Below, one piece after another: positions 58,855-64,000 of a stretch of 64,000 nucleotides of DNA. The number at the start of each line of letters is the position of its first letter. Positions within the stretch are counted from its first letter, which is position 1. The stretch comes from Vitrella brassicaformis CCMP3155 (taxonomy: Eukaryota > Protista > Chromerida): the NCBI GenBank assembly GCA_001179505.1, contig CDMY01000404.1, positions 21,561 through 85,560 on the forward strand. Reading direction: 5' to 3'. Position numbers and translations under genes: made by a program. The notes beneath the pieces are model-generated. The model made no database searches. It was not told the origin of the DNA and worked only from the letters and a program-made list of their open reading frames with translations.

Positions 58855-60957
58855 TTACGAGCGCGAGAACCAGTCGGGGACGACCTTGGTCCGGTGCTCG
58901 GGGGCCATCTGCTCGAGCTCGTCATCCGTGAGGGTGAACAGCTCGGGCATCGCCGAAGAGTTGGGCAGCCGCGTGCCCTCCTGCCGCAACTCGTCGAAGA
59001 ACTCGTGGGACAACGCCTGACGACACACACACACACACACACACGGGGGGAGTGGGTGCTGATGTGGGGGGGTTGTGGGTGTGGCGAGGGCAGCGTACGT
59101 CGTATGCCTTGAGGCGTTCGTTCGGCTCGTATTTGAGCAGTTTGGCGATCAGGTCCAGCCCCTCGGCAGGCACACCACTACCGAACACCTGCACCCACCA
59201 CATACCACACCACATCACACCACGGGCACATGTGTCGTGCACTAGTCCTTTCCAATCACGCTCCCTCCCTCCCTCCCGCTCTCTCCCTCCCGCTCTGTGT
59301 GTGTGTGCGTACCTTCTGCCAGGGTCGGGGCTTCACGTCAGGGAAACGGAACTCAGTGTAGTTGGGGTTCATGGCCTAACGGACAACACCACACCACAGC
59401 ACAGCACAGCACTGTGTGTGGGGTGTCACGGTGACCGACATGACATGGACCTACACCACACCGACCTGCATCTGCTCCCGAGTGGGGGTGCCCATGGTCT
59501 GGATGATCTTGACGAGTTGGTCCACCGAGGTCTCGCCCGCGAACAGCGGACGGCCCAGCAACATCTCACCCAACACACAGCCTGCAGTGCAGGACACACC
59601 AACCAACACACACATGGATGAGGGATGGATGGATGGAAGGGTAAGTGAGTGTGGTGGTTTGTACCGATGCTCCAGATGTCTATGGCGGTGGTGTACTCCG
59701 TGGCGCCCAGCATGAGCTCCGGAGCACGGTAGTAACGCGAGCAGATGTACGCAACCGACTGCTCACCTGCACACACACAAACCGTCAGTCAGGAGTGCCT
59801 TCCTGTGTGTGTGTGTCTGTGTGTGGGGTGGGGGGGTGTGAGAGTGTTATGGTACCCGGGATGAGCCGCTTCGCGGATCCGAAGTCGCACAACTTCAACA
59901 CGTGGCTGCGGGTGTCCACGAGCAAGTTCTGCGGCTTGATGTCGCGGTGGCAAATCCTGACACACACGTTCACACCACACACACACACACACAGATGACA
60001 TGACATGAGAGGCTGGCTGATCGACGGCTGCCCGTCCGTCCGTCTGGTGGTGTGGTGTGGTGTGGTGTGGGGTAGGGTAGGTACCCCAGTGAGTGCAGGT
60101 AGCCCAGCGCCCGGCACATCTGGTAAACGTAAACCTGCACCACACAAACCACACAGACCACACACACACACACAGGGAGAGACCGCCATCACCATAATGC
60201 GCCCATCTCTCCCCTCCCGGCCTCAAGTGCATCATCCATCCATCCCATGCACACATCACGTCCACCGCGAGATACATACACACATACCTTGACCAGTATC
60301 ATGGGAACGCGCGAGTTGTTGCGGACGTAGGAGCGCACCACGCGGTAGGCGGTCTCGGGGATGAACTCCATCACCACGTGCAGGAACTTCTCGCCCTCCC
60401 GCTCGCCAGGGGCCTCCGTGTAGTAGTAGTCCTTCAACTCAACCACGTTCGGGTGACGCAACACCTTCAACACGCCACACACACAACACACAACACACAA
60501 GGCCATCCATCCATCCATCCATCCATTCATCCACGCAGGAGGGCATCTGGCAGGCATGTGTGTATCTGTGTCATGGTACCTTACCTTCATGATATCGAGC
60601 TCTCGGTTTTTGTATCGGGGGTCCTGCAACACCTTCTTGATGGCCACCGTATCGCCCGTGTCCATGGCCGTCGCCTCAATCACCACACCGAAACTCCCGT
60701 TGCCCAACAACTTACCTGCACACACACATCCCACCACATCCACAACAGACAGACAGAGAGATGGATAGCTCGAGATAGCCCCTCCCTCTCTCCCACCATC
60801 ACTGACCCATCTGGTACTCAGTACGAGGCCGGTTGCGGTCACGGCCGCTCGAGCCGCCCTCGCCACGGTTGGTGCGCCCGGAGGACCTATTCGCCTTGCT
60901 GGCGTCGGCACCCTGGGCCTGCGACTGGACGGCCGTGTTGGGAGCCGGATCAGACAT
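58855..60957 (-). CDS. GSK3: Glycogen synthase kinase 3 / shaggy-like CMGC kinase (about 11 exons)
   Basis: [88 protein letters not shown] and [11 protein letters not shown] are diagnostic GSK3 motifs. Confidence 0.97.
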
Positions 60958-61187
60958 GGCGAGAAGCGATGAGGGAAGTGCAACCAGCGATGAGAGGGTG
61001 ACGTCAGAGGGCCCAGGGGCTAGACAGGAAGAGAGACACAGCCGTGCTGCTGGGGGTCAACACGCAGGAAGGGGAGCCTCGCTCTCACAGCGAGTTTCGC
61101 CTTTAGAAGCCTCACAGGAAAGCACATACACAGCGATTGCACGCTCAACAGTGAGCTCGCACTCGTCGCTCGGAAAAAGTTTGCGCA

Positions 61188-62202
61188 ATGAAGTCTCTCC
61201 ACCTCAGCGTGGCGGCAGTAGCCGCCCTTGTGTCGATGGTTGGCGCGTTTGTGCCGCCGAGCCTCAGGCCGAGCCGCACTCTGTCGCCGCCACGGACGGC
61301 GCCGAGGATGCAGATCACTGTCGACGACAGGCCGGTAAGGCTTCAGACACCACACACGTCACAGGCAGACGAAGATCACGTGTTGTGGTTGTCTGATCAG
61401 GCTATCAAGACGGCGGCGGCTCCGCGGTGGCGCGTCCAAGCACCGCCCACGACTGCCGTCGACGTGGATGTCGACGTGGGTGTGGGTGTGGGTGTGGAGG
61501 TTGACACAGAGACGGGCGTCAAGACGGGGACGACGACCGACTTTGTCTATCCGGTGCTGACCACTGAGGCGGACGCCATCGACCTGGAGCTGCAGGAGAA
61601 GCAGGCCCTGATGCAGTATGCTGAAGGGTTCACATCCTTCGGCAACAAACTGCTCAACGTGAGAGAGAGAGAGAGAGGGAGAGGGAGGGAGGTTCTCTCT
61701 GTGTCATCCATCCATCCATCCATCCATGTGTGTGTGTCTGGTGGTTGTGTTGTTGTGGTTGTGTGTGTGTGTCAGCTGGGTTGGGTGATCATCGGTTTGG
61801 GTATCTTTTGCGGCGGCATGTGGGCCAAGGATGCGTGGGGGGCCTTCTGGTCGTGGGATCCCAAGGAGACCTCCGCTCTCATCGTCTGGCTCATCTACGC
61901 CGCCTACATACACACCTCCATCATCCCTTCCCTCAAGGTCGGTCAGCACAAGCACAAGACAAGCACAGCACGTCTGCCAACCACACACACAGAGAGAGAG
62001 AAGGCACCACACGCACACGCACACTCACACGCCGGCCTGACTGTCTCCCTCTTTCTCTGTGTGTTTGTGCGGTGCGTGTGTGCAGGGGAGGACGCAGTTT
62101 TGGACGACGCTGATGGGTTTCTTCTCGATATGGCTGTGTTACCTGGGCATCAACTTCCTGCAGTGGGGCATGCACTCGTACGGATTCATCATCCCCGAGT
62201 GA
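61188..62202 (+). CDS. ccsA: Nucleus-encoded, plastid-targeted C-terminal part of cytochrome c biogenesis protein CcsA (4 exons, ~227 aa)
   Basis: Leader MKSLHLSVAAVAALVSMVGA|FVPP. Exons 61188-61334, 61401-61658, 61776-61937 and 62086-62202 give GGMWAKDAWGAFWSWDPKETSALIVWLIYAAYIH and YLGINFLQWGMHSYG, i.e. the WWD domain and two His. Confidence 0.9.
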
Positions 62203-62573
62203 CGTGACCTGACGTGTGTGCAGTGAGTGCAGGGGGCGGGTCCATGTGATGTGGGTGTGGGTGTGTGGGTATGTGTATGTGTATGTGTGTACACAACAAC
62301 GATCTGTGAAGTTTTCCCACCCACTGTGAGAGAGAGAGAGAGAGAGATACAATACATGGCATGGCTGGGGGTCCACGAGCTAATGCTCATGGTGTGGATG
62401 ATGGATGTGTCATGTGACTGGTGATGCGTGCGACGGGCCAAGAGAAGAAGCCGTCGGTTTTTCTGTGTGGAGTGCAGTTGGCTGCATGGCATGATGTGTG
62501 CAGTGGGTGGGGTGGGTGGTGTTGGCCATGTGTGTGACGGGACGTGACGGTGGAGTTTGTTTTGCTAGCTGCC

Positions 62574-63050
62574 TTACCGAGAAGAGATCATTTTTCTCTC
62601 ACTTACACACACAGAGATGGACAGATGGCTGCACTGCACACAGAGGGATGGTTTGGTGGGCTGCGTAGATGCGATCCGCACAGGGCGGCAAGAAGCCCTC
62701 TGCGTCTTTCCCCGTGACACACAGTTGCTGCTCTCGGCGTTGGATGGCGTGGCGGGTGGTAATCGTTGTTGCGTTGTGTGAGACACCACGACGAGGCAGA
62801 CGTTGCCAGCCGGTGCTGCATCCATCGCCGATTTGCGGCAGCCACGCATGAGACAGACCGAGACAGCCTGGTTGATGGCGGATTGCAATGCATTCAACGG
62901 GGGATTTCGCTTCCCTCTTGTTGAATGACGTGTGAGTGTTCGTGGCGAGGCTTGCCTTTTTCTCGAGCAGCTGTTCCTGACCTTCGTGGGAGTCACAGCA
63001 GCGACTGATGGCGCCACGACGGTCGGGCGATGGCGTTCGGGAAAGGACAA
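62574..63050 (-). CDS. Possible hypothetical protein exon
   Basis: 158-aa ORF lying in non-repetitive GC-rich sequence; no recognisable motif. Confidence 0.25.
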   Translation of the reverse strand: MSFPERHRPTVVAPSVAAVTPTKVRNSCSRKRQASPRTLTRHSTRGKRNPPLNALQSAINQAVSVCLMRGCRKSAMDAAPAGNVCLVVVSHTTQQRLPPATPSNAESSNCVSRGKTQRASCRPVRIASTQPTKPSLCVQCSHLSISVCVSERKMISSR

Positions 63051-64000
63051 AGCCCCGCATTACACACCACACCACTCACACCAGGTGTGGGATGGCTTGT
63101 GTTTGACTTGACGCGAACAGACCAACGCTGCAGTGATATCATTGCAATATATATTCACGCACAAGTCACCCACACCCGACAGAAATGGACTGACTCGCGG
63201 CACGAGATAAAATGAGTGAGACATAAGGACAAAGGTGACGGTCGCCACGCCCCACACACACACCCCAGGTATTTGCTACCGGCTGTATCCATGCCGATGC
63301 TGATCACATGATCCATGTGTCGCATAAACAGACAGACAGAGCGACAGGCGGCAGGGACACGCACACGGCGCCACGCGGCACTCCCCCACTCGCCAACTTA
63401 TACACACATGTGTGGAGGCAGATAATCAAGAAAGAATAGAATAGCCGCCAACTCTCCTCCCCTCCCTCTCCCATTCCCCTTCTCCTCCCCTTCCTCAGAG
63501 CGATGGATTGAAGCCTTCCACTGCCACTGCCACTAACGTTCGTTTGTGTCTCCAGACAGAAGTGGATGTAAGAGTGTAGGCGCCTACATGCTATGAGAGT
63601 CGAGTGGACTGGGATACGCACACAGTTTCATTTTCGGTTTGCGAGAGTCCATCGATCATCCACAGATACACGCAAGACAGCATGAACGTCCTTGAGAGCC
63701 TCAGAATGGCCCGCCCGCCTAGGCAGCCCTATTCGTTGACCTGTCTGATCTGCCGAGCCCGATACTCACCCTATTCTCTCTAGCCGCGACTGGCTGCCCC
63801 CGTATCGGTGGTTAGGGGGTAGCTCAGATCCTTTCCGACAAAAGTAAAAAATAACCGCGCAGATGGTGTGATTCAATCGGGTGTAGTGACCGGGGGTCCA
63901 CTCGCAAACGTCGAGAATCTCGACATGCAGGCCCCATTTCGCATGTGACCCCCATATAATGAAATTGCAGAAAGGCAGCCCACCCAGATTGTGTGACACC

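What the first reader, a model, noticed from the sequence alone, without database searches (positions are those of the whole stretch)
61188..62202. Nuclear, intron-containing, plastid-targeted half-CcsA: candidate split gene after endosymbiotic transfer
Established: ccsA is normally plastid-encoded (~300+ aa) with three essential His, the first in an N-terminal W..xHV helix. Seen: a signal peptide with an A|F transit start, a low-complexity linker, then only ~110 aa of CcsA (the helix before WWD, the WWD domain, IYAAYIH and GMHSYG). The N-terminal TM helices and first His are absent, and I see no room for them between exons. Inference: either System II heme lyase is built from two separately encoded CcsA halves, or this is a truncated accessory copy.
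Basis: partly seen in the sequence, partly recalled or inferred. Interest (0 to 1): 0.75.

Follow-up and report, generated by a model that had tools for sequence, protein, structure and literature searches.

The report
Nuclear gene for half of CcsA
The alga Vitrella brassicaformis, and its relative Chromera, express a nuclear gene that sends only the back half of the chloroplast heme-attaching protein CcsA into the plastid, so this enzyme is probably built from two pieces encoded in two genomes, although I could not read the plastid piece myself.

Summary
Window 61188-62202 (+) is a four-exon gene of Vitrella brassicaformis. Its spliced product is exactly the public 227-aa model P0001. Transcript contigs from three runs confirm the introns and show no further coding exon.

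The protein has a signal peptide ending VGA|F, an S/T/R/P-rich leader and a low-complexity linker. After that comes only the C-terminal part of CcsA: Pfam PF01578 positions 126-212 of 212, NCBIfam TIGR03144 positions 141-252 of 252. That part is three membrane helices, the WWD motif and two of the three conserved CcsA histidines. The N-terminal helices and the first histidine are absent.

Chromera velia has an expressed gene (Cvel_17213) with the same layout and the same breakpoint, so the arrangement predates the split of the two chromerids.

A published paper reports a plastid ccsA in both algae. An unchecked note from this scan (s1-227044) says the Vitrella plastid copy holds only the N-terminal half. 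I could not fetch that gene, so the two-genome split is the best-supported reading (about 0.7) but is not shown.

I found no paper describing it. It is a new variant of a known kind, comparable to split cox2 and ccmF.

The parts
61128..61187 (.). Short divergent promoter region between the kinase gene (minus strand) and the half-CcsA gene
   Evidence: The kinase transcript contigs end at 61125-61127. The half-CcsA contigs of two runs both end at 61186. An in-frame stop lies at 61152-61154.
61188..61334 (+). Exon 1: start codon, signal peptide (aa 1-20, 61188-61247, ending VGA), Phe at +1 (61248-61250), and the start of the S/T/R/P-rich transit-like region
   Evidence: Translation. Hydrophobic stretch at residues 4-22. 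Splice joint 61333/61400 in runs X1, X2 and X8.
61335..61400 (+). Intron 1, 66 nt, GT-AG, in frame and without a stop
   Evidence: Joint seen in three runs. Ends read.
61401..61658 (+). Exon 2: rest of the leader, the (VD)n(VG)n low-complexity linker, and a conserved helix ahead of the first membrane helix (aa 105-135)
   Evidence: Translation. No Pfam family. The segment aligns with Chromera P0120. AF2 helix 10-61 of the model corresponds to aa 105-156.
61659..61775 (+). Intron 2, 117 nt, GT-AG, in frame and without a stop, holding (GA)n, (CATC)n and (GT)n repeats
   Evidence: Its removal follows from record arithmetic of the transcript contigs and from the exact match of the spliced CDS to P0001.
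61776..61937 (+). Exon 3: membrane helix, WWD motif (61836-61868) and a second helix with His181 (61911-61913)
   Evidence: PF01578 E 4.8e-19, profile positions 128-176. Alignment to CcsBA 7S9Y.
61938..62085 (+). Intron 3, 148 nt, GT-AG
   Evidence: Joint 61935/62084 in runs X1, X2 and X8.
62086..62202 (+). Exon 4: third membrane helix, GMHSYG with His219 (62173-62175), and the stop codon
   Evidence: PF01578 profile positions 184-212. Translation.
62203..63161 (+). 3' untranslated region of about 0.92-0.96 kb
   Evidence: The transcript contigs run on from the CDS to 63123 (X1) and 63161 (X2).

Best explanation
This is a working nuclear gene for the C-terminal fragment of the System II cytochrome c synthase subunit CcsA.

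Proposed mechanism:
- The protein is made in the cytosol and enters the ER through its signal peptide (inferred).
- The Phe-initiated transit peptide carries it across the inner plastid membranes (inferred).
- It inserts into the thylakoid with three helices, so that the N-terminal linker faces the stroma and the WWD loop and the HSYG histidine face the lumen. This topology is inferred from Chlamydomonas CcsA and from the CcsBA structure.
- There it pairs with a separately encoded N-terminal CcsA fragment, which supplies the five N-terminal helices and the first lumenal histidine. That fragment is most likely the product of the plastid ccsA gene. Ccs1 completes the complex.
- The complex attaches heme to cytochrome f, c6 and c550.

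The break lies in the stromal loop between the PALQSxWLxxHV helix and the helix before WWD. This is the most length-variable part of the family.

Chromera velia has the same arrangement, so the fission is older than the Chromera-Vitrella divergence.

Shown here: the gene model, its expression, its domain content, the Chromera counterpart, and the conservation of key residues. Inferred: the targeting route, the topology, the partnership with a plastid N-half, and the origin by transfer from the plastid.
For: Gene model and expression:
- The spliced CDS is identical to P0001.
- Transcript contigs in three runs confirm the introns and give an mRNA from about 61186 to about 63160.

Domain content:
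- Only the C-terminal part of the family models is matched: PF01578 positions 126-212 of 212, and TIGR03144 positions 141-252 of 252 at 130 bits.
- As a control, Sargassum CcsA matches TIGR03144 positions 4-252 at 332 bits.
- Residues 132-222 align to residues 809-900 of Helicobacter hepaticus CcsBA (7S9Y), which is only the C-terminal end of that 942-residue chain.
- The AF2 model has three helices (pLDDT 83.6). Its best Foldseek matches are CcmC, CcsBA and CcmF.

The Chromera counterpart:
- Chromera velia Cvel_17213 (P0120, 255 aa) has a signal peptide ending SDA|F, a linker, and PF01578 positions 125-212 only.
- It is found on 16 transcript contigs, with in-frame stops upstream of its ATG.
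- The two proteins are each other's closest relative and form a clade with support 99/95.
- They share 8 departures from the family consensus.

Constraint and the missing histidine:
- Each protein keeps 25 of the 31 columns that are at least 90% conserved, including every W, D and H of the WWD, YxH and HSYG motifs.
- The mature proteins have only two histidines, so the third must come from another chain.

The break point:
- The distance from the N motif to WWD ranges from 80 to 325 residues in 243 homologues.

The plastid partner:
- PMC3894158 reports a transcribed plastid ccsA and ccs1 in Vitrella, and a plastid ccsA in Chromera.
- Scan note s1-227044 says the Vitrella ccsA encodes only the N-terminal half. 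This is a lead only.
Against: - I never saw the plastid ccsA sequence, so its extent is unverified. Three protein searches and one metagenome scan failed to bring it in.
- No assembly, localisation or activity data exist.
- Targeting was judged by eye and by hydropathy only.
- The Vitrella-Chromera clade joins two long branches.
- Some residues of the Vitrella protein (KETSALIVWLIYAAYIH, IPSLKG) look more like non-cyanobacterial CcsAs, so origin from the plastid copy is not established.
- Euglena gracilis appears to have a full-length CcsA with a long N-terminal extension (P0013). Import difficulty therefore does not force a split.
Confidence: 0.7

Rival explanations
1. Accessory or regulatory truncated copy. 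The plastid ccsA is full length and sufficient. The nuclear C-half is an extra subunit, for example a dedicated synthase variant or a competitor for heme or Ccs1.
For: The plastid ccsA is annotated simply as ccsA in the literature, with no mention of truncation. I could not inspect it.
Against: - A redundant fragment would not be expected to keep 25 of 31 near-invariant columns, with the same breakpoint, in two lineages only 39% identical over the aligned part (126 positions).
- The unverified note s1-227044 says the plastid gene is an N-half.
- No second, closer CcsA C-half of Vitrella appeared among the best 150 hits of the exhaustive search. This is weak evidence, because Chromera's own counterpart ranked only about 114th.
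Confidence: 0.12
2. The C-half works without any CcsA N-half. It pairs with Ccs1 or another protein, which supplies the missing heme ligand, and the plastid ccsA remnant is dispensable or does something else.
For: - The C-half holds WWD and two of the three CcsA histidines.
- Ccs1 contributes a histidine of its own in System II (PMC5526843).
Against: - In studied systems, four strictly conserved essential histidines are described. Three are in CcsA, including one in the N-half.
- CcmC and CcmF also flank WWD with a histidine on each side (established knowledge of the family).
- The plastid ccsA is retained and transcribed in both chromerids.
Confidence: 0.1
3. Transcribed relic: a decaying fragment of a transferred ccsA with no function.
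For: It is truncated. It scores below the curated cut-off of TIGR03144 (130 against 187.6 bits).
Against: - The ORF is intact across four exons, with a complete targeting leader.
- Transcript contigs have substantial depth in several runs.
- An expressed counterpart exists in Chromera.
- All catalytic residues are kept.
Confidence: 0.04
4. Mis-modelled gene: a full-length nuclear CcsA whose N-terminal exons were missed.
For: None found.
Against: - Two transcript contigs end at 61186, and no joint links the gene to upstream exons.
- There is an in-frame stop at 61152-61154.
- The neighbouring gene starts 60 nt away on the other strand.
- There is no CcsA N-half in any frame of the window.
- Chromera mRNA contigs show the same short protein, with stops upstream.
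Confidence: 0.02

Closest known systems
Plastid-encoded CcsA of System II cytochrome c maturation (Chlamydomonas CcsA; Sargassum fusiforme CcsA, P0009)
   Same: - It belongs to the same family. TIGR03144 is the best NCBIfam model, ahead of CcmF/NrfE and CcmC.
- It has the same WWD motif, the histidine-bearing helix after WWD, and the HSYG histidine.
- It is 40-46% identical over the shared part.
   Different: - It is encoded in the nucleus, has introns and a bipartite leader.
- It lacks the first five helices and the first histidine.
- It covers only the last 87-112 positions of the family models.
CcsBA fusion protein of Helicobacter hepaticus (PDB 7S9Y/7S9Z)
   Same: Residues 132-222 align to residues 809-900 of the chain (E 1.2e-16). 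The model superposes at 2.6 A over 83 columns.
   Different: The bacterial protein shows the opposite trend, with Ccs1 and CcsA fused into one 942-residue chain. Here CcsA itself appears to be divided.
Split CcmF of plant mitochondria (ccmFN/ccmFC, and ccmFN1/ccmFN2 in Brassicaceae and Trifolium)
   Same: A WWD heme-handling protein of cytochrome c maturation is broken into separately encoded pieces that are thought to work together (PMC7139807, PMC8321540).
   Different: That case is System I, not System II. The pieces stay in the mitochondrial genome. Here one piece sits in the nucleus and must be imported across the several membranes of a complex plastid.
Split cox2 (cox2a/cox2b) of chlorophycean algae, alveolates and some wasps
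   Same: An organellar membrane-protein gene has undergone fission into complementary genes, with relocation to the nucleus in protists (PMC5374615, PMC9895450).
   Different: It involves a different protein and organelle. In alveolates both halves are nuclear, whereas here the halves would lie in two genomes.
Fragmented plastid genes of Chromera velia (psaA-1/psaA-2, atpB-1/atpB-2)
   Same: This is the same lineage, and it is known to tolerate split membrane-protein genes whose products assemble (PMC3894158; PMC12830998).
   Different: Those pieces both remain plastid-encoded and are Chromera-specific. The half-CcsA is nuclear and shared with Vitrella.
Apparently nucleus-encoded full-length CcsA of Euglena gracilis (P0013, EukProt transcript)
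   Same: It is a CcsA with a long N-terminal extension typical of imported proteins.
   Different: It carries both halves (N motif at residue 314, WWD at 433), so that relocation did not involve a split.

Membership tests
CcsA/ResC, System II cytochrome c synthase subunit (Pfam PF01578, NCBIfam TIGR03144) | Tryptophan-rich WWD motif | tested here: met
   WGAFWSWDPKE at aa 156-166. Every W, D, P, K and E that is invariant in 58 references is kept.
CcsA/ResC, System II cytochrome c synthase subunit (Pfam PF01578, NCBIfam TIGR03144) | Histidine in the helix after WWD, and histidine in the C-terminal HSYG | tested here: met
   H181 (YIH) and H219 (MHSYG) fall in invariant columns. They lie within the stretch aligned to CcsBA residues 809-900.
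CcsA/ResC, System II cytochrome c synthase subunit (Pfam PF01578, NCBIfam TIGR03144) | First conserved histidine, in the PALQSxWLxxHV helix of the N-terminal half | tested here: not met
   The motif is absent from P0001 and P0120. There is no other histidine in the mature proteins.
CcsA/ResC, System II cytochrome c synthase subunit (Pfam PF01578, NCBIfam TIGR03144) | Full-length match to the family model above the curated cut-off | tested here: not met
   PF01578 positions 126-212 of 212. TIGR03144 positions 141-252 of 252 at 130 bits, against a cut-off of 187.6. The Sargassum control matches positions 4-252 at 332 bits.
CcsA/ResC, System II cytochrome c synthase subunit (Pfam PF01578, NCBIfam TIGR03144) | Closer to CcsA than to the other WWD proteins, CcmC and CcmF/NrfE | tested here: met
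   TIGR03144 E 1.2e-37, against 1e-10 for CcmF/NrfE and 8e-08 for CcmC. In the PDB search, CcsBA E 1e-16 against CcmF 1e-05 and CcmC 2e-03.
Split organellar gene with complementary halves (cox2a/cox2b type) | The missing half is encoded separately in the same organism | tested here: inconclusive
   A plastid ccsA exists in Vitrella and Chromera (PMC3894158). Its extent was not obtainable. Note s1-227044 says it is N-half only, which is unverified. No N-half lies in this window.
Split organellar gene with complementary halves (cox2a/cox2b type) | Both halves are expressed | tested here: inconclusive
   C-half: spliced transcript contigs in three runs. Plastid ccsA: reported on polycistronic transcripts in the paper only.
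Split organellar gene with complementary halves (cox2a/cox2b type) | The two products assemble into one functional unit | not testable with these tools
   This needs the N-half sequence for co-folding, and biochemistry.
Bipartite targeting leader of complex red-type plastids | N-terminal signal peptide followed by a transit peptide that starts with Phe | tested here: met
   Hydrophobic stretch at residues 4-22 (KD 2.15), then VGA|F. The next 50 residues have 9 S/T, 8 R/K and 3 D/E. Chromera has ...AVSDA|F. This was judged by inspection, without a trained predictor.
Bipartite targeting leader of complex red-type plastids | Demonstrated plastid localisation | not testable with these tools
   No localisation or proteome data were found.

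The most novel reading that the evidence does not exclude
In the common ancestor of Chromera and Vitrella, the eight-helix cytochrome c synthase subunit CcsA was cut in its variable stromal loop. The five-helix front stayed in the plastid genome. The three-helix, WWD-bearing back moved to the nucleus. The heme-binding site of a System II synthase would then be assembled from a plastid-made and an imported polypeptide. To my knowledge this would be the first split CcsA, and the first heme-handling protein divided between two genomes.
Probability: 0.62. Interest if true: 0.7.

Novelty: new variant of a known kind. Interest (0 to 1): 0.62.

Why it matters
CcsA is one of the genes that almost every photosynthetic plastid keeps (PMC5526843). 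A natural case in which only part of it moved to the nucleus bears directly on why some organellar genes resist transfer, whether because of hydrophobicity and import or for other reasons.

It also gives a ready-made two-piece version of the System II synthase. With it one could ask which helices form the heme channel and how the WWD site is built.

In practical terms, both gene models are currently labelled only 'cytochrome c assembly protein' in public databases, and the plastid gene simply 'ccsA'.

Tried and rejected
Attempts to obtain the plastid ccsA of Vitrella or Chromera all failed:
- A word-indexed search with the N-half of Sargassum CcsA listed only the best 120 of 7049 hits, and no chromerid was among them.
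- A profile of 16 diverse N-halves, with the length window set to 71-226 aa, gave 571 hits. The 120 listed were all ordinary fragments.
- An exact scan of the metagenome collection with the published Chromera ccsA primer gave six chance matches without any CcsA. That collection does hold the Chromera transcriptome.
- The PNAS 2010 and MBE 2013 plastid-genome papers are not held.
- The supplements of PMC3894158 and PMC4873144 give no gene lengths.
- Short N-half proteins on long contigs were considered as possible chromerid-like plastids. P0393 turned out to lie on a plastid-like contig where many genes are broken into pieces, so it is an assembly artefact. P0389 is simply a truncated ORF.

Other readings checked and dropped:
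- Hidden exons.
- A CcmC or CcmF identity.
- A pseudogene.

Other points:
- A tree could not place the origin of the chromerid C-halves, because the branches are long.

Full report
**What is there**

The window is nuclear DNA of Vitrella brassicaformis CCMP3155. A search with the region returned, at E 6e-46, a 227-aa public protein (P0001). NCBI labels it 'unnamed protein product [Vitrella brassicaformis CCMP3155]' and UniRef labels it 'Cytochrome c assembly protein'.

I joined exons 61188-61334, 61401-61658, 61776-61937 and 62086-62202. The result is a 684-nt CDS whose translation is identical to P0001. The three introns (66, 117 and 148 nt) all start GT and end AG.

**Expression and completeness of the model**

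- Contigs of public runs X1, X2 and X8 carry the joints 61333/61400 and 61935/62084. By record arithmetic they also lack the 117-nt intron 2.
- Two independent contigs (1607 and 1645 nt) run from 61186 through the CDS to 63123 and 63161.
- The head-to-head neighbour is a protein-kinase gene on the minus strand (Pfam Pkinase). Its transcript contigs end at 61125-61127.
- An in-frame stop lies at 61152-61154, and no start codon lies between it and the ATG.
- I built a CcsA profile from 85 full-length sequences and ran it with all filters off against every stop-to-stop frame of the window. It finds only the known exons.

The protein is therefore complete as modelled.

**What the protein is**

- Pfam PF01578 matches only profile positions 126-212 of 212.
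- NCBIfam TIGR03144, the equivalog model for this System II subunit, matches only positions 141-252 of 252. The score is 130 bits, below the 187.6 cut-off. Sargassum fusiforme plastid CcsA, run as a control, matches positions 4-252 at 332 bits.
- CcmF/NrfE and CcmC models score far lower.
- Against solved structures, residues 132-222 align to residues 809-900 of Helicobacter hepaticus CcsBA (7S9Y, E 1.2e-16).
- An AlphaFold model of residues 96-227 has mean pLDDT 83.6. It shows one long helix (aa 105-156: a soluble part running into the first membrane helix), the WWD loop, and two more helices.
- Its four best Foldseek matches are CcmC (two entries), CcsBA (2.6 A over 83 columns) and CcmF. The E-values are weak, as expected for a three-helix model.
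- In an alignment with full-length CcsAs, the protein has nothing opposite the SNLYES and PALQSxWLxxHV helices.
- The mature part has only two histidines, H181 and H219.
- A review of the pathway describes three conserved CcsA histidines, two lumenal and one stromal, plus one in Ccs1. All are described as strictly conserved and essential (PMC5526843). The absent one is the N-half histidine, H212 in Chlamydomonas CcsA by my own knowledge of that work. This polypeptide cannot supply it.

**The leader**

- Residues 4-22 form a hydrophobic stretch ending VGA, followed by Phe.
- The next 50 residues are rich in S/T (9), R/K (8) and A/P (17), and poor in D/E (3).
- A (VD)n(VG)n run follows.
- This matches the signal-plus-transit leaders of complex red-type plastids. 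I had no trained predictor, so targeting is an inference.

**A second species**

The exhaustive search of 1.84 billion cluster representatives gave 8501 hits, and no hit other than the query itself below E 1e-30. I screened the listed hits for proteins that have WWD but lack the N-half motif. This turned up P0120. It is Chromera velia Cvel_17213, also present as a MMETSP transcript (UniRef A0A0G4FJ33, 255 aa).

- It begins with MRSLSSIATATVFGALAVSDA|F, has a long linker, and matches PF01578 positions 125-212 only.
- It is carried by 16 transcript contigs, and stops lie upstream of its ATG.
- Vitrella and Chromera are each other's best match (47% over 101 columns). They form a clade with ultrafast bootstrap 99 and SH-aLRT 95. 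Both branches are long, so this support should be read with care.
- Independent of the tree, they share eight departures from residues that are at least 70% conserved elsewhere. Two of these (Y131N and R183S) occur in none of the 58 references.
- Each keeps 25 of the 31 columns that are at least 90% conserved.

The other short WWD-only proteins that I read from the hit list, 19 of about 35, are fragments of ordinary CcsAs or calls with spurious N-termini.

**Where the break lies**

In 243 homologues, the distance from the PALQS motif to WWD ranges from 80 to 325 residues, with a median of 119. The chromerid proteins begin their homology just after this loop. The cut therefore sits in the part of the protein that tolerates the most insertion.

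By the published topology, WWD and two histidines are lumenal and the third is stromal. The linker of the C-half would then be stromal and its C-terminus lumenal.

**The other half**

Dorrell et al. (PMC3894158) report a plastid ccsA in both chromerids and a plastid ccs1 in Vitrella. The Vitrella ccsA lies on an rps14-psbV-ccsA-psbK transcript. The paper does not give the gene's length.

A first-stage note of this scan, on another piece of the same genome (s1-227044, 640 letters), is titled 'ccsA encodes only the N-terminal half'. It is an unchecked AI note, and I could not test it. My three protein searches and my one metagenome scan did not bring in the plastid protein, and the plastid-genome papers are not held.

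**Weighing the readings**

The case for the split model has four parts:
- The half-gene is conserved in two lineages, with the same breakpoint.
- All catalytic residues are retained.
- One required histidine is missing.
- Both species keep a transcribed plastid ccsA.

Together these make 'two separately encoded halves of one CcsA' the most economical reading, at about 0.7. The rivals rank as follows:
- An accessory copy beside an intact plastid gene: 0.12.
- A C-half that works without a CcsA N-half: 0.10.
- A relic: 0.04.
- A mis-modelled gene: 0.02.

The origin of the nuclear fragment is unresolved. The best hits are cyanobacterial or plastid-type, including an ochrophyte plastid CcsA, and the last helix is of plastid type. 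However, parts of the middle helix and the IPSLKG turn resemble non-cyanobacterial CcsAs.

The split could have arisen by fission in the plastid followed by transfer. It could equally have arisen by transfer of a whole copy followed by complementary loss. Nothing here tells these apart.

**Novelty**

Both gene models are in public databases with generic names. Full-text searches for ccsA with Vitrella, Chromera or CCMP3155 found no paper that mentions a nuclear or split CcsA. Two relevant papers could not be read.

Split WWD proteins are known in plant mitochondria, as ccmF pieces. Split, relocated cox2 is known in several protists, including alveolates. This finding is therefore a new variant of a known kind of event, affecting a gene that plastids almost never give up.

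Noticed in passing
window 59465-61127 (minus strand): A multi-exon protein-kinase gene lies head to head with the half-CcsA gene. It has a GxGxxG motif and [10 protein letters not shown], so it looks GSK3-like by eye. The two transcript 5' ends are only about 60 nt apart (61127 against 61186).
   Followed up: partly
window 61335-61400 and 61659-61775: Introns 1 and 2 are 66 and 117 nt, both multiples of three and free of stops, so one ORF (61188-62207) reads straight through them. Retaining either intron would insert residues in frame rather than truncate the protein. Intron 2 carries (GA)n, (CATC)n and (GT)n runs, in line with the AC-to-GT intron polarity that other notes of this scan describe.
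   Followed up: no
window 62203-63161: The 3' UTR is long, about 0.95 kb. In run X8 the contig depth over 62340-63174 is two to four times that over the CDS. This could be 3' bias or a second overlapping transcript.
   Followed up: no
P0013 (Euglena gracilis transcript, 504 aa): This is a full-length CcsA preceded by an extension of about 200 residues with two hydrophobic stretches, like a euglenid plastid leader. It suggests that a whole ccsA was relocated to the nucleus in that lineage.
   Followed up: no
P0126 / L013, L014 (environmental transcript contigs, 427 aa): This is a full-length CcsA with an Ala-rich N-terminal extension of about 110 residues and a long Ala/Ser-rich loop. It groups with the chromerid C-halves in the tree, but the tool flags that as long branches meeting. 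It may be a nucleus-encoded CcsA of an unidentified alga.
   Followed up: partly
L015 (JGI contig of 90.6 kb): This is a plastid-like contig (psbY, psaC, thiG, rps6, ccsA, clpC, rps10, tufA, rps7, rps12) in which many genes are called in several pieces. The cause is probably indel errors in the assembly. It shows that many 'half CcsA' entries in the protein collection are artefacts.
   Followed up: partly
P0001 aa 105-135 and P0120 aa 137-170: The stretch just ahead of the first membrane helix aligns between Vitrella and Chromera (F/W-x-Y-P, then an acidic amphipathic helix). It is not the LDxLSYR segment of ordinary CcsAs. It might be a lineage-specific docking element for the other half.
   Followed up: no
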